A DNA stretch of 64,000 nucleotides from Thalia democratica (Eukaryota): the NCBI GenBank assembly GCA_965202585.1, contig OZ241832.1, forward strand, positions 53,444,001 through 53,508,000. The letters are read 5' to 3'. This document shows positions 1,624-59,800 of the stretch, piece by piece (position 1 is the first letter of the stretch; the number at the start of each line of letters is the position of its first letter). The notes under the pieces are model-generated. The model had not been told where the DNA came from and ran no database searches. It was given only the letters and a program-made list of their open reading frames with translations. Both the position numbers and the translations under genes were made by a program.

Positions 1624-2886
1624 TTAATTTCTAGTTACAAAATTGCATTGTGATTCACATGCCAGCTTCACCAGCAAGTTCACTTCCTCCTCCTTCAAAC
1701 CTCCGAGCGTCACCCTCAACGAAAACTCGTATACTCCGCGCTGCAAGGTGAACTTTTGAAAGTATTCGGTTCGCGGGTGGCCCTGCAGCTTTACCAGGTA
1801 CTTGTTGGCGTTCAACTCGTTCGGCATCAAGTAATCGAGCCTAACTCTTCTTCCGCTTGAAGTGAATCGCATTTCCAACCCCTCGAACTTGTCAGTGTAG
1901 GAAAAGACGTTCAACATGAACGTTGAAGCTTTATTTACCATTATACTGCAAGTTCTTACGGTTACAGAACCATCTCTGTCAAAACACGAAGGTTTCAGTT
2001 GTCGGTCGGATTTAAACACCGACTTGTACACTTCTTCTGAATGCAGGCAGGTCATTTGCACTTGCCTCTTGTCAAGTTCGTCAATCGAAACCCAAAGTTC
2101 TCCCTTGCGCGGGTCAGCGGTCTCGGTTAAACTTTCAGGTAAATTTTCATCTGAAACGCACCAGTTAGGGTTGCATCTTGTATCGTAGAGCTTCAGAGCG
2201 TTGTGCTCGTCAGAGTAACCAGTCACCGTGTACGCGTGCCCGTAACCACCAGCGTTCAAACTGTTGAAGAACGGCGTCACTCCCAGCACTATTGAGCTTT
2301 TGTTTTCAACTTCCAGCTCTAGGTTTTCTTTGAGATCAAATTTCGGTTCCTGCCTCTCCCAAATGCGATAGCCGACCATGGAGTCGCTGAAACAGGAAAA
2401 CACGAAAACGGGCCGCGTCGCTATCGAGTACTGGTAGGATTTATAACAAGCTTGCTTCACAAAAGCTTTTTCTAAAAACGAGGACAACATCAGGCTGTCT
2501 TTTTCCAAAGAGTGCGCGTATATCAGGTAATTTTTTTCAGAAAAGTGAAGCGCGTCATCCACCGTGATCGTGTTGGGTTTTCCTTCCTTAAACATTTTGA
2601 AGTGAAGTTTCATGCGGTTTCTTGTGCAGGTGAATTCTGGAGCAATTTTTGTTTTGAACTCTGGCCTGTTGATCAGAGAGGCTAATGAGGATATCAGTCC
2701 ACAGTTTCCTATTTCTCCTTGTTTGAAGTTAGTGTATTCTATTTTCTTCTTTTCTTGAAGTTTTATGAATGTTGTCGTATTAAAAATCTTAAAATTAGTT
2801 TTTTTGTGCATCTCTAAGATTTGGAAAGTCTCAGTTGCTTGTGAATTATCCATCTTAATGTGTACAACGCTTAAAAATAAAGTCAT
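1624..2886 (-). CDS. Intronless calpain-like cysteine protease (CysPc catalytic domain plus domain-III-like C-terminus); first true ATG probably at 2853 (MDNSQ...)
   Basis: 420-codon ORF with calpain-like motifs in the right order: QGEIGNC (cf. QGxLGDC), SSFLEKAFVK (cf. ALLEKAYAK), GHAYTV (catalytic His), GELWVSIDEL (cf. GEFWMSFEDF), FQKFTLQRGVY (cf. domain III RFxLPPGxY). Confidence 0.8.
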   Translation of the reverse strand: MTLFLSVVHIKMDNSQATETFQILEMHKKTNFKIFNTTTFIKLQEKKKIEYTNFKQGEIGNCGLISSLASLINRPEFKTKIAPEFTCTRNRMKLHFKMFKEGKPNTITVDDALHFSEKNYLIYAHSLEKDSLMLSSFLEKAFVKQACYKSYQYSIATRPVFVFSCFSDSMVGYRIWERQEPKFDLKENLELEVENKSSIVLGVTPFFNSLNAGGYGHAYTVTGYSDEHNALKLYDTRCNPNWCVSDENLPESLTETADPRKGELWVSIDELDKRQVQMTCLHSEEVYKSVFKSDRQLKPSCFDRDGSVTVRTCSIMVNKASTFMLNVFSYTDKFEGLEMRFTSSGRRVRLDYLMPNELNANKYLVKLQGHPRTEYFQKFTLQRGVYEFSLRVTLGGLKEEEVNLLVKLACESQCNFVTRN

Positions 2887-17222: not shown

Positions 17223-20200
17223 TTAATTGGAAAACACCAAATAACTAATAACTGACACACATGCAAACATCAACCACTTGTTTTCTGTTGAGCTTGAGGC
17301 TGAGTTGCCTAAAATTTTATCATCTTTTAGTTTTACTTTAGTAAAGTTAAAAATTGCTATTAAGAACTATTCAATATCAAAAACTAAAAATTTACAGTTT
17401 ATTTTAGACAAAGATAAGATTGTTCATACAAATATTTTTGCCTTTTGTTAATTTTATTGTAGTTGATAAAGTTGATCAAAATACTTAAAAAATACAAAAC
17501 TACAGCAAAATTTACTTTGTTAGTATATTTCTTAAAGACTTAAAAATATTGTTTATAAAGTTTATTTTAAAAATTTCATTTAAATCTAGAAATAAGACAA
17601 TTTTTAGAATCTAAGATTAATTTAGTTTAAAAGCTAGTTTGCGATAGTATTACAAAATCTAATTTATGTATTTCAAAACATCAATATTTATATATACCAT
17701 ATTTTTATAGGATTTTGTGAGGATGCTTATAAATTTATAACATGTTATTAAACTTAAATAAAATGTAAAAGAAATATACAAACTATACCTAACTAAACCT
17801 AAAATTAAAAGTGCTTCCCGTAATAAGCTTATTTACAAACTATTAAAAAAATACAAACCTGCAAATTTAACAGAAGTTGTTTCTGTTGAGTTTTGGTCTC
17901 GTTTTCCATGTATGTTCTGTTGGCATGTATATTTTTGTTTGACGTAAATATCGTTTACATCAAACTCCTGTCTGATGCAAACTTGACTCTTCTCACAACC
18001 CCCATTGCATTTCGATTCTGTTTTAAAATAAAAAAGTTAAAGAGTTTTTTATTTAACTTTTATTGAGTTTAGTTACATCTGTCATATTTGTAGTTTTTCT
18101 GTTTGTTCTCAAGTAATAATTTGTTGAAAACAGACTAAAAACTCAACAAAAAGTCTTATTTTCCATACCAAGAATAATCAAACTATAAAAGTTCCTTTTC
18201 TATTTTTTCAGCTCTTTTGTAATGGTTTTACTTACTTTAAGTCAAAAATTTTGTAAATGCTCACGCTAAATTTATTTAAAGTTTAAATTAAAAACTTTAT
18301 AACTAACAATTGCTATTTACTAACTAAATTTTTGTAATTTTAAAATGTCAATCTTTCTGTTATTTTCTTAACTGTATTTAGTAATAAGCTCGTTATCTCA
18401 AAGAAAAACTATATTTTTAAAATAAAAAACTTTTTGTCAAATAAGCCAGCAAAAATACAACGTATTAGTTCTTAAAACAAAATATTTAGGAGTTGATCTT
18501 TCATTTATTAAAAAATCAATTCTGCTAAGCTAAACATACTTATAAGTTTAAAAAAGGACAGACTGTCAGCTTACTTTTTATTTTGTAAAAATAGAATTTT
18601 TTAATAAAAGGTGGCTGCATAAACTTAAAAGTATATTTCAGCAGTGTTACGTGTTTTAGTATATTTTGTAAACTTAATTAAATCTTTAATGTCTTTATAA
18701 ATGTTAGTCTTTGTTTCTAAAACAGAGTTGTAATTGAGGGTCTCATTAATCTTATTGATTAAGTGAGTGAAAAATTGTTCTTTAAAAAATTTTTTTAATA
18801 ATAAGTTTATATTTCTATTTTTGTAGGTATAAAAGTTTTAGTTGAAAAATTTTATGCTAATACAACCTAATTAAAAATCCCTTAAAAAAATTACTTTTAG
18901 TAACATGTTTACTAAGTTGAAAACAATTTACCATCTGTATTTGTTTGAAAGCTCGGTTGAGAACATTTGTAATCAACAGTACTTCCAGTGACGTTTGTCA
19001 CCAAACAACTCTCATCTGTCCCGCATATCTCAGGTTTTTCATGACTTTTTGTGTTTCGAAGGCAAACGTCTGCAACATTCCAAAACAAAGTTGTTAATCG
19101 CAGTAAAAGTTTTATAATAAACTTTTAATTTACAATAGTTTAACTAAGACAACTAGGTAAAATAATCAAAAGATTGTTTTTAAAACATTTAAAAACTTTT
19201 ATTGCACAGTCAAATTCAAAACGTATTAAAGAGTTTTACTCTCTTTTTCAATAAACTTAATAATAATAAAAAAAATTATTCAAATAGAATCATTCCATTA
19301 TTTATTCTACTTGAATGAAATATTAAATATAAAAGAACTGCAAACAAACGTTGGCTACGTCTTAGAAATACTTGAGTTTTATATTGTACTTATAAAGCTT
19401 GTTTAAGATAACCTAAAATACAACTAAAAACTGCAATATACGATAAGTATTGAAAACTTTTATTATTACGTTCTACGCGAAACTTTTGGTTTAATCACAA
19501 ACCAGCGTTCTCCACAGTTACATTTGCGCAGCGCGGATGTGTGTGACAATTCTCATCGTCCAAGCACTCAGTTGCTTCACACCAATCCCGGTGGCCGTCT
19601 GTAGTTTTTCAGATTTGCTGATTTAATGCCCGGTTTAAAAAAATAAAACAAAATACTATTATATTTTGATTACAGTAATTTTTAAAACAATACTTTAAGT
19701 ACAACCAGTAGGTATGAGAAAGTTTTGTGTTTTCGTATTATATTTCTAACTAAACTACCGTGAAAATATGTTTTTAAACTTTTTTATAAAGTTTTTGATG
19801 ATCAAAGATTGTGTGAAAGAAACTAAATAGGAATAGTACCAAATTGGTTTTAAAATAGGAAAACTTACGATGTTCACAACGTTCACCAAAATAATCACCG
19901 GAACATATACACGTTTTAACATTATCCTCAGATTCGACGCATTTTCCGTTCACACAAAAATTATCAGTTGTGCATGGTACTGGTTTAAAAGATTGTATTA
20001 ATTAAAAATGAGTCAGCTCGAAAAGTTATAAAAACGTTTTAAATATTTTTACATAAAAACAGCTACCGTTACCTTCATAAAACGTTAAGTAAAATTTTTA
20101 CAAATTTGAAAACAACACTTTATAACATCATAACTAATAAAGATAAATTATTAAGATAACATAATAGAATAAGTTGTCGATAAAATATGCATATATTATA

Positions 20201-21771
20201 CTGTTTTAAATCATTTCATTGTTCAACTTAACATAAAACTAACGATAGCTGGTTCCGTTCTGGTTGTTACAGTCCAAAGAGTAGGTGTTGTTTAAACAAA
20301 GTTCTGAAAACAAAAAAAAAGTTATAACACTATTTATACTTTTTAAAACTTACTTAAACAGTCTTTTTTTAAGATCTTCGTTATAAACTACTGTTTTTAG
20401 CAAATGTCAAAATTTTAATGCTTAGCTATGTTCGAGATTATTGAGGTAATTGTTACACATATTACAAAAAACATTTTACTGAATAAGTGTGACTAAATAA
20501 GGTTTATAGGTAAAAACCACAACACATACAATGATACAGGAATAAAATTACATAAACACGTGTTTCAATAAGTTAGGAACATGGTCTTAACTTGTAGTTT
20601 TCGAGCTTGTTCTTTTTTAAGATTTGTTCAAAGTTGGTAAAAGGTTATGTATAAAACAAATTTACTTTAAAAGTAATTATTATGGTATATAACATAAAGT
20701 TTTGTTAATGTCAAAAATATAGCTTTTATTGGCTATACATAACTTAAAATACAAAAATACAACAAAAAGTTACTGAAACTAATCAAAAAAAATTCTTCAA
20801 AATTGAAAAACATAATTTTTTGTTAAATGTCAGAAGTTCATTTTTTATTAATTTTCTAAACTTTTTTTTCAATAACTTTTTCAAAAATGTTTAAATTACT
20901 GAAATATGTTTAATAAGCGTAAAAGCGATTTAAAAGCCTTAATTTTTTCTTTTATTAACTTAATTTTCCAAAACTATGTAGCTTCAGTCATTTTTTTGCC
21001 TTTTTAACAAACCAGTCATTTAATTAACTTATAAAATTTTTAATGAATAATTAAACTAACCAATATCGCAAAATACTCCGAAATACCCAGAAAAACAGCT
21101 ACAATAAGGTACACCCATAATATCATTCATGCAGATTCCTGGTGCGGCGTTGCCACTTCTACCGCAATCGAAATCAGTTGAACATTGTTTTGAAAGTTCA
21201 CCTTTACAAGTAAAATTTTTTCAAGTAGTTATAATCATTTTCGTAGTCGAAATAAAAAATTTTACAATAATATGGCTTATAAAAACTATTTAGTACCAAA
21301 ATAGTTTACTTTTGTTGAATACTAAACCTTTAAGAGTGTTTCTTTTACGAATTTTGTGTAAAATTGTAAACACTTAACAAAATAAAACTTCTTTTAATAT
21401 AGATTAGTTTTGTATTCAAAAACTCGTATTCTATTTATTTAATATAACAAAATCATTAGAATATATAAGAATATTAAGTAGAGTTATTGAACTTTTTTTT
21501 TTAATTTAGTATATGTAAAATGTAAATTAATTTCTTATACCAAAAGTAAAAGAAAAATTTTCGTATAGAGCATTTGAAATTTTTTTAAACGTTATAAACG
21601 TATAATAAACTTTTGCCAAAAAAACTAATTTCGATTAAAAAAATAAGTAGAATTTTAACGTAATTTCTACTAATTTAATTTGTTGACACATAATTTAACT
21701 TTACCTTTTACTATGTGAATTAAAAAATTCATTTTAATAGTTATAAGACAAATTCGTAGCAAAATAGACAT
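17223..21771 (-). CDS. 8-exon secreted cysteine-rich protein, 285 aa: signal peptide, two EGF-like domains, three 4-Cys (FOLN-like) modules and a GPI-anchor-type C-terminus
   Basis: Exons (minus): 21771-21705, 21201-21061, 20303-20244, 19979-19869, 19598-19503, 19069-18932, 18017-17859, 17308-17223. All introns GT-AG and phase 1; total 858 nt, open to TAA. EGF1 CSTDFDC...GICMNDIMGVPYCSCFSGYFGVFC; EGF2 CTTDNFCVNGKCVESEDNVKTCICSGDYFGERC; tail GNSASSSTENKWLMFACVSVISYLVFSN*. Exon 1 (MSILLRICLITIKMNFLIHIVKG) is the least certain. Confidence 0.85.
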
Positions 21772-24109
21772 ATTCAGGACTTCAGATATAGCTTATAAAA
21801 AACTGCTAAGTAAGCTTTGAATTATTTTTAATCTTAACAGAATTAATATCTAATACAAATACTTAAAATTTACTTTAATTAAAATACAAATTTTTTTTAA
21901 TACAACTTGTACAAAGTTTTATCTAGAAGTAAAAAAAGCATGTTATATCTTATAATCTTATTAAAAATCATTTTATTTAAACAAAACTATAAAACAGTTA
22001 AACTTTGTTTAAGAAAAATACCTGTTTCAAAATAAACTTATATAACTAGAAATATAATTTATTCATCAAATGATAAAACTTTTGGTTATTAATACTTTTT
22101 AACGAATGCCAACTTTTAAATACTGTTATTTTTATATTTTTAAAGAATGCGTTTATAACTAAATATTGAAAAAATAATATGTACTCAATAAGTTCCATAA
22201 AAAAAACCGATACTAATTATTTCACATTATAAAAAAAAACATGGTAACAAACAACTGTGTGCTATTGTATAGTAGCTGAATAACATTATGTACCTTTATA
22301 TAGATTCAAAATTTTGAAAAGACACCTTTAAAATCCTTTAAAAAGTTTTTTTTTTAATGTGCAATTACTTTTTATTTATTTATATTTGCTGTCACTATAA
22401 ATAATTAATATTATTAACTTAGTTTAGTCTATAAGAAATAGCGAAAACGATTGTTTTAAAACTTTTTCACGTTTTATTTTATAAAATTGTGATTATAAAC
22501 AGCAAATTTGTCCTTAAATTATATAAATAACAGTTTTTTCTTAAAAATGATACATGCTATATGTTACTTCAAGTTGTGAATATTTTTGATTTACATAGTT
22601 TTAAGGTGAAAATTTAAATAAAGAAAAATTTAGTAGTCATTATTATATATAAGGCAAATCTTTAGACATAGTTTCTGCTTTAGTAAAGAACATTTAAAAG
22701 GTCAAATTGTTTAAGTTTTATAACTCCTGAATTCTTTATACTTTTTTTTTTATTCAGCTGATAGTAAAAAAAATAAACAAAAAATAAAATTTAGTGACTT
22801 CTTTGTATCTTTCTCATAACACAAAACTAATGTATGAATAACATTGTAATAATATAAAATACTAGAACAGCTCAAGCTATTTAGTTTACTATTAGCATTA
22901 ACGTAAAGTTTTAAAACACTTTACTTGTAAACTGACATAAATAACCATACCAATGAGTATATAACTTAAATAAAATTAAACAGTGATAATTTGTTACATA
23001 AAAGCAAATAATTTGCTTTAATACAAGTTGTTGAGATTATAAAATCATTAAAACAAATTTTTTTTAATAGTGTATAAGAAATTAGAAATTATTTTATCAA
23101 GCTGTTTTCAGTTAAATTAGATCACTATTTAGTTATAACTTTTATAACTAATTAGAAAGGTATCATTTAAGTTATTTTAAAATTTGTTTGAACTAATTAA
23201 ACAACAGAAGAAAAGAGTTTTTTTAATTGAAAAAGATCTTTGTTAAAAAAGTTCTAATGTCATCAAAATAGATAAGACAGTTCATATTTCTAAATAGTTC
23301 TAAACGAACAACTACAAGCCTTTAGTTAATATAACTTTGTAATTAAAACATAATATTTTATTTTAAATGTAAACTTGATAAATTTCTTCCCCTTGAACTA
23401 TATTTATAAAAACCTCAAGTTTTTGCTATTACGTGAGAAGTTTAGAATACTACACCGATTATGCGAGCAAAACCTTCACAACAAAACATTATAAACCGCT
23501 TTGTAGATGGACTACTGCAGGATTTTAGGTTTTGACTGACGAGTTCAATAAAACTACTACTCTCAGTCTACCGAAAACTTGTCGTCTGATGATCGAAGTC
23601 ATATGATCAGACCTTCATGTTAACTTGAATTTATGTAACAGCAACGTGGCTAGCTTGAAAAATTTACCAATCTGCAAAATACAAAAACAACGGTGACGAC
23701 GCATGATGACGTAATAGAAGTAACAAGGTAATTTATACTACCTCCAGTGTCATTGTGTTTTGTATTAAAGTATACAAGTATGTTAAACTTCGAAATAAAT
23801 GGAATTTTGAAGTATAAGAAATAGTTGTATGCAAGGCAGTTTATGTTGCTACACACCAGTGGTATCGCCAGGTATTTTTGTTTAAAATGTGAAGAATTAA
23901 AGACAATCCCCAAACTAAAACTTGTATTTTAAATCAATTTAAGAACTTTTTACGTTACAACTACGTCAATTTGTCAGTGTAACAAAACATTTGTTTTTGT
24001 TTTTTTTTATCAAAGTAACATAAAAAGTCTTAATGTAAAAAACTACCTAATCTTAATAGCTGTCACTACTTTTTCAATTTAAAACTATTCTGGTCCTGAT
24101 TGAGTTTAC

Positions 24110-50800: not shown

Positions 50801-53800
50801 GGTCGATAATTACTTCAACGCGTTCACAAGTCCCAATGTAAACGGTAAATTCGAGGAGAAGACTTGTGGCGAAGGGCCATCGTTGGTAGCCATGTTTGAA
50901 GACGACAAGCAGTTGCATCAGCTTATAAGCGAAACATCCGTAAGTTTGCAAATTAAGTTTTGATGTTCTAAGGAATTGGTAAAAATATTTAAGGATAAAT
51001 ATTCTTATTTACTTTTTATTAGTTTAAAATAAGGTATAGTTGCCTATGTTACTAATTCTTTTGAGTTTTTGAAATAGTAAAACAAAAATGTATTGATAAA
51101 CTTATTTTTAGAATAAAAAACTAAACTAATTTTTTTTACTAAACTAATATTATATATCAAAAGTAGGATGTTAATGTTTTGCTAGAAATCAGTGGATAGC
51201 GCGTTCAAGTCAGCAGATTATTACGTTCACACAATGAGAAAATTCCACAAGTTCTATGAGGAAAACGAGTTAATGGATGTAAAATCGCTGGACAATGGGT
51301 CGTACGATGTCGAGTTAGTTTACTGTTTTGTATTTCATTTTGCTTGTTTGTTTTGTTCCGAATATTAACAGTTAACATAACAGATGGTTTGAGAGAATGC
51401 TGAAAAAGTTCAACGAACAGCACAGCACAGCTCAATCCATAGTGACGAAGCGTGAGATGGGAGTATTGCTGTTAGATGTAACTAAATTGAAGAAAAAAAT
51501 TGTTCCCAACCCACTGAGATGCCTGAAAGTTTGTATAGTTTACTAGCACCTAAAAACATAATCAATTTGTTAATTACCTTTGTTTTTATTTAATTCTAGT
51601 TATGCAGATAGATGCTTTAAGTAAAAATGTTATGTTTTACTACTAAACAATTTAATTATAAGATAGTATTAGTTGTTTTTTTGATCTGTTCGTTGTGAAA
51701 AGCTTCTTAGAATCTTTTGTATTTCATACTGCAGGCGATACACGATGTTCTTCCGGTTTTAGCCCGTCAACAGATGAACGCAATTGAGGTGGAGGCTCAC
51801 GATGCGCAGTTTAAGCTGGAAATGAAACCTTCCAGCACCATTGAATTTGTAGACAGTCTGACGTTCCTCGATGAGATACAAGACAGAATTGAGGAAGTTG
51901 ACGCCAACGCCGTTATTGTTGAAAAAATGTACTCTTTAATCGAGCAGTACGACATTTCTGTTTTCCCTGAAGACATAGCTGCTTTTAAGGTCTGTAAAAC
52001 CTCTTTTAAGCAGTTCAATACATTTTCTAAGCTATTAGTTTGATATTAAAATAATTTGACTTTTATTTAAGTATCATTGATTATAAATTTATTAATTTAC
52101 CTCAACGTTGGAAAGAAGTAAATCATTAAAAAAATCTGTAGCAATTAAGAACAACTGTGAATAATGTTCGAAACGCAATTGACAAGTCAGTTAGCGAGCG
52201 AGAAAAGGATATTTTGAATTTTGAAGAATGCCTTCAAAAAGATATTGCTGAGCTTAAAAAAGAAGTTAAGTCACTCAAACAAGAAGGCCAGGTTATAAAT
52301 TTATTTACTATGTATCCAATTAAAAGTTGACATTGTTTTGTCTTTGACTTTATCTTTCTAACTACATCATGTTTTTTTATTTTGAACTTTATCATTTTAA
52401 TTTCTTTGTATTTGAATTCGTAGATATAAAGTCTTTTGATAAAAAACTTTTAATAGGATCCTGCGATATTAGATAAACATTCTACTAAAGATAAAGTCGT
52501 TGAATCGATAAAGCACATGATCTCAAGAATGGAAGAATTAAATGCAAGCTCTCTCAGATACAAAGGATATCAAAAGCAGTTTAAGGTTTTGAATTATTGT
52601 CTAAATTAAGTTGTACCTGATTAGATTTGTAGTAGACTACTTAATGGTTTTGCTGTTTGAATAATGAAGTCAACGCTACTTAAACACTTCTTGTTAATTT
52701 TAATACTTAACCCTGAAAAAAAATAGTAAACAAAAACATGTATACAGTTAAACTTAGTTCATATTTGAGTAGAAAAACCAGTATTCAGTTTTATACAAGC
52801 AAAACAAATACAACAAGTAAATTGTTAGTTACTGTTGAGAAGATTTCACTTGGTGCGTATTTTAGAGCTACTTTTATAGTGAACATTCAGATCTATTAAC
52901 GTATAATATAACAAAAAGTCAAAGCAAAAGTTTTTAGAGCTTGTTTCTAAACCTACTTGTAACCGTAATATCTTTTAATTAAGTTTGTTCTCAATTTTTT
53001 TCAATTTAAGCTTGAAGTGACAAAGTTCGATGAGTTAGAAGAAGTTCACTCGGAACTCAAACTGAAAGAACTGCTTTGGTACTCGTTAGACGATTGGGAT
53101 GCACTGTACAACAAATGGGTCGCCACAAAGTTCGACGAAATCGACATCGAGGAAATGACTACCCAAGTATATTGATTAGTTTAGAAGGTTTTGTGAAACT
53201 TAAGTTTGATATTGATTTCTTTTCAAGGTTAACAAATATGCGAAAATAGTTCATCAAATTGAAAGAGGCCTCCCTCCAAACGACGTTGTTCCAATGTTAA
53301 AGAGCAAAGTGATGACTTTCAAAGAAAAAGTGAGTAATTATTAGTATGAAGCCTAAGGACTAAAATAAAACTTGATAAACTTACAGATGCCTATGGTATC
53401 GAATTTGAGAAATCCCGCTCTGAAAAATAGACACTGGGAAATGATCGAAAGCGTGTTACAAAACAAAATACCAGGGCGCGAGGAACATAAAGAAAGTGGT
53501 TGGTGTTTTTTATAAATTCAGTTGAATTTAGTGCTTGTATACGAACTGATTTGTTGATATAATGTATCATAAAAAATTGAGTAGTTCAAAGTTTAGATGT
53601 AAATTTTATTTAAAATCTTATTTTGATGTATATATGATCTTTATTAGAATAATTTACATTTTTGAGAAAATTTAACGAACTATTTATGTAACTAAAGTCT
53701 TACAATATTAATTGTGCCGAAAGATGATACTGCAGAAGAAGAATACTTGACTGTGGAAATGTTGGACAGCTGGAAGGCGTTCCAGCATACTGAAGTTGTC

Positions 53801-56800
53801 GAGGAAATATCGGGAATGGCGAGCGGCGAAGCTGCGTTGGAAGTGATGATCAAGAAAGTAGAGGAGCAGTGGAAATCGCTGGAATTCAACCTACAGCTGC
53901 ATCGCGACTCGAAAGATGTCTTCATACTTGGCTCCACCGACGACATACAGGTTTCTATATTGCTTGCTTCTGTGTTTAGTGTGTGAAGCTGATTGTATTT
54001 AGTATGTTGCAATATATTATTATTTGTTTTGATTTTAGACATGTGAATAAGTTTTAATTTGTTATTTTTAAGTTGAATTAGATAGAACTATACTTCTAAT
54101 ATTTCACCATGCAAGTTCGTTTTCAACCAGGTAATGCTAGATGACAGCAGGATAACAGTTTCAACAATCGCGTCCAGCAGATACGTGGCACCCATCAAAG
54201 AAAAAGTCGAGGAATGGCATCGCCACTTGAACCTCATGAATGAAACACTCGTTAGTGGTTTGAGCTTTAAATTTTTGAATGTTTTTCTTACAAACTGTAT
54301 TGTTTTTAGGAGGAGTGGTTGGTTTGCCAACGCAACTGGCTGTATTTGGAATCCATATTTTCAGCTCCTGACATACAGCGTCAATTGCCTGCAGAAGCTA
54401 AAATGTTCTTGATTGTCGACAAGTCCTTTAAGGAAATAATGAGAAAAGTTTACAGACTGCCAAATGCTCTAAGGTATAAATGACTTTATTTAAATGCTTT
54501 TGTTTTGTGGATTGTATATAAATAAATTGATATAATGCTTTTAGGGCTGCTACATCACCTGGTCTTTTAGAAGAATTCCAGAAGGACAACGCTCTTTTGG
54601 ACCAAATACAGAAGTGTTTGGAAGCTTACCTTGAATCTAAGCGCGTTGTGTTTCCCAGATTCTACTTTCTTTCCAACGAAGAGCTCCTTGAAATTCTTGC
54701 TCAAACCAGAAATCCCATGGTTAGATGATCGTTTAATTTTTTTCAAATTCTTCAAAGTGTTTATTATCTTGAGTTACACTAAACTCTTGCAGGCCGTGCA
54801 ACCGCACCTTCAAAAATGCTTCGACGCCATCAAAAAGCTGCAGTTTGGTCGCACCGAAGAGGGCAAAGTGACCACTGACATCCTCGCAATGATTTCCCCC
54901 GAAGGCGAAAACGTCACTCTCGGCAAGGGTATCAAAGGTACAGTGTTAATTTACTAAAAAATAAATTGAACTTACAACTGAGATGTTTTTTATCAGCGCG
55001 TGGAAATGTTGAAGATTGGTTGGGAAGAGTGGAGGAGGCGATGGCGGTGAACTTGAAGAAGTTGATGAAGGCGGGAATGCACGAGTTCATAGAAGCGGAA
55101 ATCAGCAGGGAGAGCTGGTGCGTGGACCACTGCAGCCAGGTGGTTCTCACCGTCAGCCAGATCATGTGGTGCCAGGAGGTCACCGAGATACTCAACTTCA
55201 ACTACGACGAAGTTCAAGGGGAAGTCAACGACGATGACGCGCCTCTCAGCCCTGATTCCAGCAAGGAGCACCCAGGAAGCAACGGAAAGCACAGCGCTGA
55301 GTTTGACTCTCGCCAATCCTACTCGTATACAAATGCAGGTAACATGATGACTTGTAAATAATCCTTCATTGTTTTTAAAAGTTTAATTAATTTGATTTTT
55401 CTAACCTTTCTTTTTTGAACTATTTATAAAATCGCCATCAGAAAAGTTCAATCCTGTCCTTGAAGCCATGAAAGAGTTTGAGGAAATAAATTTCGAAAGA
55501 CTAAACTCACTTGCTTCCTTGACAAGATCAAATATTCCAAAGCTGCACCGAAACAATATCACTGCCCTCATTACCATTGATGTGCACGCCAGAGATATAA
55601 TTTCAGAAATGGTTGGTCTTCAATTAAAATATACCTTTCATGGCCATACAATAAAAAAATCAATCTAAAATAAATTTCACGCTACTAGTTCAAATTTATA
55701 TATCTGTTTACATAGTACAGGTATTTTTAAAATTAACAAAAATATTCAAAGGTGCGTCAAAAGATAGACAACGACCAGGACTTCATGTGGCTGCGTCAGC
55801 TGAGATACTACTGGGAACCTGACATAGACGATTGCGTGATAAAGAGCGCAGGCAACAAGTACGTGTATGGATACGAGTACCTGGGCGCGTGCCCTCGCCT
55901 CGTCATAACTCCGCTCACCGACCGGCACTACCTGACCATGATGGGAGCTTTGCAAGTTTGAACTACTTGTTTTTTTTAAATTTAAGCATAAAACAGCTAG
56001 CTTTTTTGTAGCTAAAATTATATTTTCATTTTGATTGAAAGCAATATAAATGTAATAATTTGTCACAATCTTTTTCTTAAAAAAATCTCTCTAACAGTTG
56101 GATTTGGGAGGCGCACCTGCCGGGCCTGCTGGTACAGGAAAAACTGAGACAACAAAAGATCTGGCGAAGGCCCTAGCTAAAATATGCGTCGTTTTCAACT
56201 GCAGCGAAAGTCTCGACTACAAAATCATGGGTCGATTTTTCAGGTATCATATCAAACACTGATTTGTTTTGTTTTGTTTTCAAAACCGGTTTGACTAACT
56301 TTTTACCCGAATCACAGCGGGTTGGCGCAATCAGGTGCTTGGCTGTGTTGTGACGAGTTCAACCGAATCGACATTGAAGTTTTGTCTGTCATTGCACAGC
56401 AGTTGCTCACCATTAGAAACGCTAAAATGCAGCATCTTTCAAGGTAAAAAAATATTTTTATGTATACAGCATTTTGCTTTATGAAAGCATTCATTTGAAT
56501 TTTGATATCAGGTTCATGTTCGAGGGTCGTGAGATAAAATTGATACCGACTTGCGCCGCCTTCATTACAATGAACCCCGGTTACGCGGGAAGAACCGAAC
56601 TTCCGGATAATTTGTCCGCTCTCTTCCGTCCCATCTCCATGATGGTGCCCGATTACCAACTGATCGCAGAAGTTATTCTGTACTCGGAAGGTTTCGAGGG
56701 CTCAAAAATTCTTTCAAGAAAAATGACGCAGCTCTACAAGCTTTGCTCTGAACAAGTTAGTGTGAAAAAGTTGTAGGTGTTTTATAAACCAAAATATTTT

Positions 56801-59800
56801 GTTGACTAGAAAAAATAATTGCAATGTAGCAACAGTATAGTCAAAAACTAATACTTTAATGAAAATTGTTCAACAGCTGTCACAGCAAGACCACTACGAT
56901 TTCGGCATGCGAGCAGTCAAGTCGGTGCTGGTGATGGCTGGAACTCTCAAGCGTGAAAATCCCGACATTCACGAAGAAGCCACCCTCATCAGGGCTCTTC
57001 GCGACTCCAACCTGCCCAAGTTCCTTTCACAGGTTAGTATTATTATTTCTATGTTAAAGTTTGTAATAAAATTTTCGTAAGATCCAAAGGTTATTTGTAA
57101 ACTTGATATACAACTTTAAAGTTGAACGTTTTTAGGATGCACTCTTATTCGGAGGTATTTTGAGCGACTTGTTCCCAGGAGTAGACATTCCTGAACATGA
57201 CTACGGAGTTTTTGAACAAACTATCAAAGATGTCATGCTCAGAAATAAACTCAAACCTGTTTCTGTGCTTGTTAAAAAAGTAGGCATAATAAAAATGTTA
57301 TTTTTATACATGCCACAAATATAAAGCTTTTAAACTTTCACACAACTTATATAATAACTCTTTTAACGTGCAATCAAACTGAAGGTGATACAATTGTACG
57401 AGACGATGCTGGTGCGTCACGGCTTGATGCTGGTGGGACCGACCGGCGGCGGAAAGACCGTTTGCTACCAGATGCTGGCGCAAGTGCTCGAGATGCTCAA
57501 GATCAAGGGCCATCAGAACCCCGAGTACAAGCCGGTGAAGACGACCGTCATGAACCCCAAGTCCATCACCATGGGCGAGCTGTACGGCGAGGAAGACCCG
57601 AATACCATGGAGTGGAAAGACGGTTTGATGGCAATCAGCGTCCGGCAAGCTGTTCTGGTATGTGTTTTGTATTAACATTATATGAGTTATAGACCTTAAT
57701 GGAATTCATTTGTTTTACTTTTGTATTAGTTATTATTTTATTAGTTTATTATTTGAATAATTTTATAAATACTGAACTACAATGTAGAAAATCATCTAAA
57801 ACAATGATTTTCATACAGTATATTTCATACACAAACCAGTAATATATTTTACAAATGCACTGACAACTGTGACTTGCAACAGCAAACAAAGGATTCATCG
57901 AGTGATCATCAATGGATAATTTGCGATGGTCCCGTAGACGCGCTGTGGATAGAAAACATGAACACAGTACTCGACGACAACAAGATGCTCTGCCTCGCCA
58001 ACAGTGAGAGAATTAAGCTGGCTGAAACGATCCACATGGTTTTTGAAGTGCAGGTGATTTAAAAATAACGACTAATAAAAATAACGTTCAATAATGAGTA
58101 TAGTAATTTTGCTCTCATAAAACTTTTGAAACTCATTTAACTTAAAACAAATATTAAGATTTTAAAACATCCATATAGGATTTAGCAGTTGCCTCTCCTG
58201 CAACAGTTTCTAGATGTGGTATGGTTTACATTGATCCGCCAGATCTCGGATGGAGACCAATAGTCGGTACCTGGCTAGACACGAAGATGGCCCAGCACAT
58301 GACGGTTACTACTAAGAATTTCATCAGTGATTTGTTCGATGCTTATGTTGAGGACGGAATTAGGTAGATCATTATCAACTAAACTTATTTATTATAAGCT
58401 TTTTTTTCTATGATTAAATTGTATAAATATGCTTCATTTTACAATAAACATAAAAAATTACTATTTTATAAAAAGTTTAGTGTATGACTTATAAAAAACG
58501 TTTAGAATTTTTTTCTGTTTCAACAGATATGTCGAGAAAAAGCTCATACAGACCATGGTCCAAGTTCCAATAAGCAAAGTTAAAACTTTGTGTAAATTGT
58601 TGGAATCGCTGCTACTTGGAAATAATGCACCTGATCTTAAAATGGTTTGCACTTTTTACTGGTAAACTAAATAACTCTACGTATATATATATACATATAT
58701 ATATATATCTACGAATAAATTAATTTTTTTCACACTGAGCCCACCTTCAGGGCTTTATTAATAAAAAAGTTTATTTCAAGATGCAAAACTCAAAGGACTC
58801 GAGTTTCGTGCCTATGCACCCATCAGCTTCAAAACAAGTTTAAAATAAAGCACAAAACAAAATCACGAATGAAAGTTAAAAATTTTTTGCATAAATAGAT
58901 TATGACGTAATTTTGAAACTATCAAAAATCATGCAAAACAGCTTGTGCAAAAATTAATTTACCAATCGACAATAAACTGGCAAAAATTCATAAAATTTAG
59001 TGAGTAAATATATATTAGGACAGATAATTGAAAGAGATAAAGATAAAATTAAGATACAAATTGAAATTTAGATTATTTTAAGATGAAATTAAAACTTGTT
59101 GAACTTTAAAAGCGACTTTTTTATATGTCTACAAGACGATACAAACTCGCTTCTTTTATTTAGGCATCTCTTGTCTTTCAGTGCATATACAACGGCTGAT
59201 GCTTCTTTGAGACACAGCCTACATATTGGGCTATTACCGTCAGCTATAGGCTGTGCTCTTTTTATAACTTCCCAGGATATTTCAAAGTCAATGCCGCTGC
59301 GCTTTAAGCCACAAACATACTTCAAAAAGTTCAGTGTCATTCTTATATATGCCGCCTCTAAAAGATTTTTTATGGTTGGCATACCTAAATCTAAACTGAG
59401 TCGAGCACAAGCCATACATAATATACATAGAAATATATTCAGTTAATTAACTTAATAAATTAAATCTTTCACACTGAGCCCACCTTATAGGCTTTTTTAA
59501 TGCTTTATTTCAAGATATAAAACATGAAGAACTCGAGTTTCGTGCCTATGCACTCATCAACTTCAAAACAAGTTCAAAATAAAGCACAAGAATAAACTTT
59601 TCTTGGAACAACTGTTTCTGCGTTCAACACGCTTCCTCAGCCAAGTATTTTATACAATTAAAGGCAAACTTCTGAGTACAGTAACAAAATTGTAAAAAAC
59701 AGATGTTACGTAATAATAAAATAATTAATTAGTGCATTTTAAACAACATAAATAACACATAGTTTATATAAATTGTTTTCGGTAATGTAAACCAGTTTGC

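What the first reader, a model, noticed from the sequence alone, without database searches (positions are those of the whole stretch)
17223..21771. Hidden all-phase-1 EGF/4-Cys gene with signal peptide and GPI-type tail
Seen: eight short exons, none in the ORF track, splice by GT-AG into a stop-free 285-aa protein. Every intron is phase 1 and each internal exon is one module: EGF (6 Cys), a 2-Cys spacer, EGF (6 Cys), then three 4-Cys modules with FOLN-like spacing (e.g. CNGGCEKSQVC...C), several N-x-S/T sequons and a small-residue omega region plus hydrophobic tail. Established: symmetric phase-1 exons are the signature of exon-shuffled extracellular modules. Inference: a lineage-specific cell-surface adhesion or recognition protein. 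I do not recognise this architecture; it is not EGF-CFC.
Basis: partly seen in the sequence, partly recalled or inferred. Interest (0 to 1): 0.7.

Follow-up and report, generated by a model that had tools for sequence, protein, structure and literature searches.

The report
Unannotated EGF-rich surface protein gene
The stretch holds a real-looking, intact eight-exon animal gene for a small cysteine-rich, probably lipid-anchored (GPI) cell-surface glycoprotein. It is one of three related genes in this genome and has no detectable relatives elsewhere, so it is a sound but fairly ordinary lineage-specific gene whose function is untested.

Summary
On the minus strand, eight short exons (21771 to 17223) join through seven GT-AG introns, all phase 1, into a stop-free 285-aa protein. 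Its layout is signal peptide, EGF, 2-Cys spacer, EGF, three 4-Cys modules, then a small-residue stretch and a hydrophobic C-terminus.

This is not chance.
- Exons 2-8 are 37-54% GC against 19-24% in the introns.
- The genome holds two paralogs (contigs C4 and C10) with the same exon plan and 27 shared Cys columns.
- Against the C4 copy, dN/dS is 0.27 (p = 3e-14) and every exon length difference is a multiple of three.
- Two marine metatranscriptome contigs of the C10 paralog confirm six homologous phase-1 introns and show that exon 1 is the first coding exon.

No RNA or protein record was found for the window gene itself. An exhaustive profile search of 1.84 billion proteins found only the C10 product. 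Only the two EGF exons match known families. FOLN, CFC and DPY models do not match, and fold searches gave nothing.

Best reading: a lineage-restricted, N-glycosylated, probably GPI-anchored EGF-type surface protein, with C10 as a soluble variant. An adhesion or recognition role is inference only. Interest is moderate to low.

The parts
21705..21771 (-). Exon 1: ATG plus a hydrophobic N-terminal signal-peptide-like segment (22 codons + 1 nt). Donor GTAAAG, phase 1.
   Evidence: The homologous exon 1 of the C10 paralog is the first coding exon in two transcripts, with in-frame stops upstream. In the window an in-frame stop lies 8 codons upstream.
21061..21201 (-). Exon 2: EGF-like module 1 (6 Cys, spacing C5C10C9C1C8C), phase 1-1.
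   Evidence: Pfam EGF_2 scores 19.2 bits, below the 22.1 cut-off. hhalign of exon 2 against exon 4 profiles gives 95.5% probability. The exon is conserved in both paralogs.
20244..20303 (-). Exon 3: 20-residue 2-Cys spacer with two sequons, phase 1-1.
   Evidence: No Pfam match, Dumpy DPY included. Same length in the C4 copy.
19869..19979 (-). Exon 4: EGF-like module 2 (6 Cys), phase 1-1.
   Evidence: Pfam EGF/EGF_2 scores about 15 bits here. The C4 copy of this exon passes both cut-offs, at 23.5 and 21.9 bits. The C10 product matches Notch EGF repeats in the PDB at E = 1.2e-6.
19503..19598 (-). Exon 5: 4-Cys module A (C4C5C5C) with one sequon, phase 1-1.
   Evidence: No Pfam match above noise. 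A divergent second haplotype in runs X1/X2 carries 3 synonymous and 3 conservative changes and no stop.
18932..19069 (-). Exon 6: 4-Cys module B (C12C5C13C) with one sequon, phase 1-1.
   Evidence: 67% aa identity to C4 and 44% to C10. No Pfam match. Only three genomic copies.
17859..18017 (-). Exon 7: 4-Cys module C (C3C5C17C) followed by a polar, sequon-bearing linker, phase 1-1.
   Evidence: The AF2 model built on a 3-sequence alignment has pLDDT 69 and shows a long beta-hairpin between Cys3 and Cys4. No fold match. Only three genomic copies.
17223..17308 (-). Exon 8: a small-residue stretch (G-N-S-A-S-S-S-T), a short polar spacer, a 15-residue hydrophobic tail, two more residues and the TAA stop. 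This is a GPI-attachment-type signal.
   Evidence: The C4 copy has the same length, frame and stop position, and its first eight residues are identical.
22582..23159 (.). Conserved non-coding block 0.8-1.4 kb upstream of the ATG, shared only with the C4 paralog locus. It may be a promoter, a 5'UTR or simply duplicated flank.
   Evidence: 70% identity over about 600 nt. Both copies carry stops in all frames. The genome holds exactly two copies.

Best explanation
An intact, selectively maintained protein-coding gene lies on the minus strand at 21771-17223. It is one of a three-gene family confined, as far as can be seen, to this marine planktonic animal. Other agents' notes call the animal a pelagic tunicate; I did not test that.

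Shown here:
- The eight-exon, all-phase-1 structure.
- Its conservation in two paralogs.
- Purifying selection against the C4 copy.
- The EGF nature of exons 2 and 4.
- Transcription and splicing of the C10 paralog at the homologous introns.

Inferred mechanism:
- The N-terminal hydrophobic segment sends the protein into the ER. There 26 cysteines form 13 disulfides within six exon-sized modules (EGF, 2-Cys, EGF, three 4-Cys hairpin-type modules), and up to five sequons are glycosylated.
- The C-terminal signal (small residues, spacer, 15-residue hydrophobic tail with no cytoplasmic part) is swapped for a GPI anchor. This leaves an acidic, stalk-like glycoprotein of about 235 residues on the outer face of the cell membrane.
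- There it most likely acts as a binding partner: a tethered ligand, co-receptor or adhesion molecule.
- The C10 paralog lacks the tail, through a phase-0 last intron, and would be the soluble version.
For: - Gene model: 285 aa, seven GT-AG phase-1 introns.
- Composition: exons 2-8 are 37-54% GC against 19-24% in the introns.
- Paralogs: the C4 copy has the same eight exons and phases, 295 aa and 62% identity. The C10 copy is 40% identical.
- Cysteines: 27 Cys columns are shared by all three genes, with near-identical spacing.
- Selection against C4: dN/dS is 0.27 overall (Fisher p = 3e-14), 0.09 in the EGF part and 0.41 in the 4-Cys part (p = 4e-4).
- Lengths against C4: exons 1, 3, 4, 6 and 8 are the same length and the others differ by 24, 21 and 15 nt, while intron lengths differ freely.
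- Sequons: 4 of the 5 are conserved in C4.
- Polymorphism: 7 synonymous and 7 conservative changes in the exons, with no stop and no Cys loss.
- Paralog RNA: contigs L012 and L013, from JGI 3300018856 and ERR1712200, align to the C10 locus in eight blocks. They confirm six phase-1 introns at homologous positions and a 5'UTR contiguous with exon 1.
- EGF identity.
- Ends: hydrophobic segments occur only at the two termini, and the tail is conserved in frame and length in C4.
- Standalone gene: no Cys-rich exons in the flanking GC islands.
Against: - No RNA or protein record exists for this gene or its closest paralog C4. The only runs that hold the locus are DNA-like contigs. The exhaustive exon-7 profile search, the fragment searches and the junction scans were all blank.
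- The signal-peptide h-region of this copy carries a Lys at position 13.
- The tail exon alone shows dN/dS near 1, on very few sites.
- GPI and signal-peptide calls rest on hydropathy and rules of thumb, not on a trained predictor or biochemistry.
- The only transcribed family member seen, C10, lacks the tail.
- The 4-Cys modules match nothing known, so no function can be transferred.
Confidence: 0.7

Rival explanations
1. The gene is real and its product enters the secretory pathway, but the protein is not GPI-anchored. Either the short hydrophobic C-terminus acts as a membrane-spanning tail anchor, or it is retained or trimmed and the protein is simply secreted into the matrix or tunic.
For: No predictor or experiment supports a GPI anchor. 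The transcribed C10 paralog ends without any hydrophobic tail, which shows the family can work as a soluble protein. The tail exon has dN/dS near 1 on few sites.
Against: The hydrophobic run is only about 15 residues and is followed by just two residues, with no basic cytoplasmic stop-transfer. It is preceded by a run of small residues identical in C8 and C4 and by a short polar spacer. That is the classical GPI-signal layout by established rules. Length, frame and stop position are all conserved between C8 and C4.
Confidence: 0.17
2. It is a silent or decaying duplicate: an intact-looking copy of the family that is no longer transcribed, a young pseudogene whose reading frame has not yet been hit.
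For: No transcript or protein record was found for C8 or C4, whereas the C10 paralog turned up three times in metatranscriptome-derived protein sets.
Against: dS against C4 is about 0.85, so the duplication is old. Even so, the frame, all splice sites, all 26 ectodomain Cys and 4 of 5 sequons are intact in both copies. dN/dS is 0.27 and all exon indels are multiples of three. Within-species polymorphism is half synonymous with no stops. The missing records are weak evidence, because no RNA run of this organism was on offer.
Confidence: 0.08
3. The eight exons are a fragment of a larger gene, with further upstream or downstream coding exons, or lie inside another transcription unit.
For: There is no direct 5' or 3' end mapping for this gene. 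A conserved block lies 0.8-1.4 kb upstream.
Against: The upstream block is non-coding in both copies. An in-frame stop precedes the ATG. In the C10 paralog the homologous exon 1 carries the start codon behind a contiguous 5'UTR of at least 540 nt with in-frame stops, and the last exon carries the 3'UTR. The stop codon position is conserved in C4. The flanking GC islands hold no Cys-rich open frames.
Confidence: 0.05

Closest known systems
EGF-CFC proteins (Cripto / Cryptic / FRL-1 / one-eyed pinhead)
   Same: Small extracellular proteins with a signal peptide, an EGF-like domain, a further Cys-rich part and a C-terminal GPI-type signal. They act as membrane-tethered co-receptors.
   Different: There is no CFC domain: no Pfam CFC hit at E<=10 on any exon or on the paralog product. 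Here there are two EGFs plus one 2-Cys and three 4-Cys modules, against one variant EGF plus one 6-Cys CFC. It is not a member.
Notch / Delta-type EGF repeats (Pfam EGF PF00008, EGF_2 PF07974)
   Same: Exons 2 and 4 have the six-Cys EGF pattern. Exon 4 of the family matches Notch EGF repeats (PDB 5mwb, E = 1.2e-6) and passes the Pfam cut-offs in the C4 copy. The language-model neighbours are Delta/Notch/Dumpy-like EGF proteins (score 0.86, a lead only). Phase 1-1 exon modules are typical of shuffled EGF domains (established knowledge, Patthy).
   Different: Only two true EGFs are present. There is no DSL, no Notch-type Ca-binding consensus hit, no transmembrane or intracellular part, and the whole protein is only 285 aa.
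Follistatin/osteonectin N-terminal EGF-like domain (FOLN, PF09289)
   Same: The first three Cys of exon 7 (C-x3-C-x5-C) resemble the start of FOLN. The predicted fold is a disulfide-pinned beta-hairpin.
   Different: No FOLN HMM match at E<=10. The C-x-C end of FOLN is absent, the hairpin is longer (17 residues), and no Kazal domain follows.
GPI-anchored EGF-module surface proteins of apicomplexans (P25/P28, MSP1-19, MSP4/5/8/10)
   Same: The design principle is the same: signal peptide, a few EGF-like modules, GPI signal (from my own knowledge, not tested here).
   Different: They belong to unrelated organisms and no sequence relationship was detected. This is analogy only.
Drosophila Dumpy EGF-DPY-EGF unit (PF21164)
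   Same: A short Cys-containing spacer sits between two EGF modules. Dumpy-like clusters are among the language-model neighbours.
   Different: No DPY HMM match on the spacer exon or on the paralog. The protein is tiny and has no ZP domain.

Membership tests
EGF-like domain (PF00008 / PF07974) | Six Cys in the pattern C-x(4-7)-C-x(4-10)-C-x(8-10)-C-x-C-x(8)-C, with an HMM score at or above the gathering cut-off. | tested here: met
   The pattern is present in exons 2 and 4. The window's own exons score 15-19 bits, below the cut-off. The C4 copy of exon 4 passes, at 23.5 against 22.1 and 21.9 against 21.5 bits. The C10 product matches Notch EGF at E = 1.2e-6. Exon 2 against exon 4 profiles give 95.5% probability.
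EGF-CFC (Cripto family) | A CFC domain (6 Cys, PF09443) directly after a single variant EGF. | tested here: not met
   No CFC hit at E<=10 on exons 2 and 4-7, nor on the exon-3 open frame or parts of the paralog product P0004. None at E<=1 on whole P0004. The Cys patterns after the EGFs are 4+4+4, not the CFC pattern.
FOLN / follistatin-like module (PF09289) | A match to the FOLN HMM, including the terminal C-x-C. | tested here: not met
   No hit at E<=10 or at E<=1. There is no C-x-C in exons 5-7.
Dumpy DPY module (PF21164) | A match of the inter-EGF spacer to the DPY HMM. | tested here: not met
   The spacer exon's open frame had 0 families at E<=10. P0004:60-135 matched only EGF families.
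GPI-anchored proteins | An N-terminal signal peptide. | tested here: inconclusive
   Residues 1-22 are hydrophobic in all three paralogs, and AF2 gives a helix over residues 2-27 of the paralog product. The window copy has a Lys inside the h-region. No SignalP-type predictor was available.
GPI-anchored proteins | A C-terminal signal made of a small-residue omega region, a polar spacer of 5-10 residues, and a 12-20-residue hydrophobic tail that ends the protein. | tested here: inconclusive
   The layout is present and conserved in C8 and C4. It was judged by rule of thumb only. No NetGPI or PredGPI was run and there is no biochemistry.
Exon-shuffled class 1-1 extracellular modules | Each module is encoded by one exon flanked by phase-1 introns. 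| tested here: met
   All seven introns are phase 1 in C8 and C4. Six of seven are confirmed by transcripts in C10.
Expressed gene (spliced mRNA) | Reads or cDNA across the predicted junctions of this locus. | tested here: inconclusive
   No RNA run holds the locus and the laid runs are DNA contigs. The junction scans were blank. Only the C10 paralog has transcripts.

The most novel reading that the evidence does not exclude
The three 4-Cys exons are so far undescribed disulfide-hairpin modules. The family forms a lineage-specific tethered/soluble pair system. Two GPI-anchored members (C8, C4) and one secreted member (C10) would have the same ectodomain plan, with the switch made by moving the last intron's donor from phase 1 to phase 0. 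The soluble form could then act as ligand or decoy for the surface forms in cell-cell recognition of a pelagic tunicate.
Probability: 0.2. Interest if true: 0.5.

Novelty: new variant of a known kind. Interest (0 to 1): 0.3.

Why it matters
The finding shows that short-exon, cysteine-rich surface-protein genes escape ORF-based views and, apparently, public protein sets of this genome. It adds a small lineage-restricted family with a clean one-exon-one-module, all-phase-1 design, a textbook product of exon shuffling. If the GPI anchoring and the soluble paralog are confirmed, the family would offer a compact system for studying tethered versus soluble EGF-type ligands in a poorly known planktonic animal. 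Without expression or binding data it remains a well-supported gene prediction, not a functional discovery.

Tried and rejected
1. RNA evidence for the window gene.
- The look-up of sequencing runs returned only DNA-like contig runs.
- Read laying showed contigs running through the introns and no true splice joints.
- An exon 6/7 junction 24-mer was absent from metagenome contigs and, with up to 2 mismatches, from the organism's own genome, so there is no retrocopy.
- The search for related loci with the exon-6 alignment was blank. That collection also failed to return the known C10 transcript, so the blank says little.

2. Protein records.
- The exon-7 profile against 1.84e9 representatives found only the C10 product, plus one spurious repeat protein, P0002.
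- A word-index search with P0001 found only itself.
- Searches for short fragments with the exon-6 and exon-4 open frames were blank.

3. Naming the 4-Cys modules.
- Pfam gave nothing credible: TAFA, defensin and metallothionein noise far below cut-off.
- hhalign found no link to the EGF exons or between the modules.
- AF2 on the whole paralog product failed, with pLDDT 38.
- The exon-7 model (pLDDT 69) gave no Foldseek PDB hit at E<=0.001 and only VIA Z<4.
- The Atlas gave no hit on exon 7 alone and only generic EGF-repeat neighbours at 0.86 for the paralog.

4. Mixed alignment. An alignment of full-length and exon pieces, meant to deepen the MSA, was mis-registered by MAFFT and was not used for folding.

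5. Tunicate test. A GH6 (tunicate cellulose-synthase) search in the organism's own genome was blank, but its control was also silent, so it is uninformative.

6. Superseded models. My first 277-aa model (acceptor at 17284) was replaced by the 285-aa model (acceptor at 17308) after comparison with C4. My first C10 model, with a weak phase-1 last donor and a hydrophobic tail, was overruled by the transcripts.

7. Omitted step. The spliced 285-aa protein was never handed to a search or folding tool, because it has no reference and must not be typed. All searches used single exons or the paralog's stored product.
Full report
**The observation**

The window is AT-rich animal DNA, 21-30% GC over most of its length. 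Reading the minus strand between 21800 and 17200 and joining the open segments at GT-AG sites gives eight exons:
- 21771-21705
- 21201-21061
- 20303-20244
- 19979-19869
- 19598-19503
- 19069-18932
- 18017-17859
- 17308-17223

All seven introns are phase 1. My first pass used a second in-frame AG at 17284 and gave 277 aa. The closest paralog lacks that AG and keeps the upstream one, and the eight extra residues are identical in both copies.

The exon-by-exon content matches the description:
- Exon 1: a hydrophobic N-terminus.
- Exon 2: a 6-Cys EGF pattern.
- Exon 3: a 20-residue 2-Cys spacer.
- Exon 4: a second 6-Cys EGF.
- Exons 5-7: three 4-Cys modules, with spacings C4C5C5C, C12C5C13C and C3C5C17C.
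- Exon 8: a run of small residues, a short polar spacer and a 15-residue hydrophobic end.

There are five N-x-S/T sequons. The mature part is acidic (net charge -16) and 11% Cys.

**Is it more than chance?**

Yes, on four independent grounds.
- Composition. Exons 2-8 are 37-54% GC, while the seven introns are 19-24%.
- Paralogs. The organism's genome (802 Mb; the window is C8:53444001-53508000) contains exactly two other copies of the family-specific exons 6 and 7. At the C4 locus all eight exons recur in order, with the same GT-AG phase-1 boundaries, giving a 295-aa product 62% identical to this one. At the C10 locus all eight have counterparts, and the product is 40% identical. In a three-way alignment 27 Cys columns are shared by all three, with nearly identical spacing.
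- Selection. Against the C4 copy, dS is 0.86 and dN is 0.23, so dN/dS is 0.27 (Fisher p = 3e-14). It is 0.09 in the EGF part and 0.41 in the 4-Cys part (p = 4e-4). Exons 1, 3, 4, 6 and 8 have identical lengths and the other three differ by 24, 21 and 15 nt, while intron lengths differ freely, for example 270 against 1349 nt. Four of the five sequons are conserved.
- Polymorphism. Variants seen in public DNA runs of the same or a near-identical organism are 7 synonymous and 7 conservative replacements, with no stop and no Cys change.

**RNA evidence**

None could be obtained for the window gene itself.
- The only runs that hold the locus are contig sets that run straight through the introns.
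- A 24-mer across the exon 6/7 junction is absent from the metagenome collection and from the organism's own genome.
- No protein fragment matching exon 4 or exon 6 is on record.

An exhaustive HMM search with the exon-7 alignment against 1.84 billion representatives found one true hit, P0001. It is the product of the C10 paralog. Its cluster has three members, from a JGI sample (3300018856) and a Logan assembly of ERR1712200. From memory, these accession ranges belong to open-ocean metatranscriptomes.

The two contigs (L012, 2117 nt; L013, 1935 nt) align to the C10 locus in eight blocks at 96-100% identity. Their junctions fall on GT-AG sites. Introns 1-6 are phase 1 and lie at the positions homologous to introns 1-6 of the window gene. 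The 5'UTR is contiguous with exon 1 and has in-frame stops before the ATG. The family is therefore transcribed and spliced as predicted, and exon 1 is the true first coding exon in the paralog. In the window, an in-frame stop lies eight codons upstream of the ATG. The conserved block further upstream is non-coding, and the flanking GC islands hold no Cys-rich frames.

**What the modules are**

- Exon 4 is a conventional EGF-like domain. It scores below the Pfam cut-off in this copy and above it in the C4 copy. The C10 product matches Notch EGF repeats in the PDB at E = 1.2e-6.
- Exon 2 is a more divergent EGF: 19.2 bits against a 22.1 cut-off, and 95.5% hhalign probability against exon 4.
- The 2-Cys spacer and the three 4-Cys modules match no Pfam family, including FOLN, CFC and Dumpy DPY. 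They show no profile-profile link to the EGF exons or to each other beyond a shared C-x5-C core.
- AF2 on the whole paralog product failed, with pLDDT 38.
- Exon 7 folded with the three-paralog alignment gives a moderate model (pLDDT 69) with a long two-stranded hairpin between Cys3 and Cys4. This fits a cut-down EGF-type hairpin, but neither Foldseek nor VIA-align found a meaningful match.
- Language-model neighbours of the paralog product are generic EGF-repeat proteins at 0.86, which is only a lead.

'FOLN-like' is therefore a spacing resemblance, not a demonstrated relationship.

**The ends**

Hydropathy finds strongly hydrophobic windows only at the N-terminus and the C-terminus.

The N-terminal segment is conserved in type in all three paralogs. 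This copy carries a Lys in the middle of it, which weakens the signal-peptide call but does not remove it.

The C-terminal exon has the classical GPI-signal layout by established rules: small residues, a short polar spacer, then about 15 hydrophobic residues that end the protein without a cytoplasmic part. It is conserved in length, frame and stop position in C4. Its dN/dS is near 1, but on very few sites.

The C10 transcripts use a strong GTTAGT donor in phase 0 for the last intron and end in a short polar peptide without any hydrophobic tail. That paralog is therefore predicted to be secreted. A hydrophobic open frame persists in the +1 frame of its last exon and resembles the C8/C4 tail only weakly (p about 0.02). 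This fits a lost anchor signal but does not show one.

**Most likely mechanism**

The exon structure, the selection, the EGF identity and the paralog splicing are shown. The rest is inferred:
- Co-translational entry into the ER.
- Formation of 13 disulfides within exon-sized modules.
- N-glycosylation.
- Replacement of the C-terminal peptide by a GPI anchor, and display on the outer leaflet as a short, acidic, stalk-like glycoprotein.
- Action by binding a partner, with C10 as a soluble counterpart.

Adhesion or recognition is plausible by analogy with other EGF-module surface proteins, but nothing here tests it.

**Comparison and novelty**

The protein works like small GPI-tethered EGF proteins such as EGF-CFC co-receptors, but it fails their defining feature, the CFC domain. 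It shares domain type with Notch/Delta EGF repeats but not their architecture. No relative outside this species' three genes was detectable. It is best classed as a new variant of a known kind: a lineage-restricted EGF-module surface protein with three unclassified small disulfide modules.

Such families are common in marine invertebrates, so a specialist would not be very surprised. The clean all-phase-1 design and the possible anchored/soluble split are the more interesting points. Notes by other agents on this genome call it a pelagic, salp-like tunicate. I did not test this. The marine metatranscriptome origin of the paralog transcripts fits it, and a GH6 search was uninformative.

**Context in the window**

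- An intronless calpain-type ORF at 1627-2886 (-).
- Dynein heavy-chain exons on the + strand from about 51.7 to at least 57.7 kb.
- No annotated-looking feature overlaps the gene on either strand.

Noticed in passing
window 22582-23159: A block of about 580 nt, 0.8-1.4 kb upstream of the gene's ATG, is 70% identical to the matching place upstream of the C4 paralog. It occurs nowhere else in the genome and is non-coding in both copies. It may be a shared promoter, 5'UTR or enhancer, or just the best-preserved part of the old duplication.
   Followed up: partly
L010 (G000:C10:22368000-22377999), minus strand 9345-5107: The C10 paralog is transcribed (contigs L012 and L013). Its last intron is phase 0, so the product ends in a short polar peptide without the hydrophobic tail. 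A hydrophobic open frame survives in the +1 frame of the last exon, now 3'UTR, and a second GT lies 4 nt after the donor in use. This could mean a lost anchor signal or an alternative donor switch.
   Followed up: partly
window 19261-19582 and 20647-20909: In runs X1/X2 the locus is covered by two half-depth contigs that differ at 24-27 of about 265-320 positions (8-9%), while neighbouring kilobases are identical. These are patchy, very divergent haplotype blocks, and one covers most of exon 5.
   Followed up: partly
window 1627-2886 (-): An intronless 420-aa ORF with a calpain catalytic domain (Peptidase_C2, E = 3e-15). It may be a retrogene in an otherwise intron-rich region.
   Followed up: no
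window 51700-57700 (+): A GC-richer stretch (up to 40%) carries exons of an axonemal or cytoplasmic dynein heavy chain (DHC_N2 and AAA_6 matches).
   Followed up: no
P0002: A 660-aa database protein made of about 11 tandem copies of a 57-residue Cys/His-containing unit scored E = 8e-16 against the exon-7 profile through repetition. It is judged spurious and unrelated.
   Followed up: no
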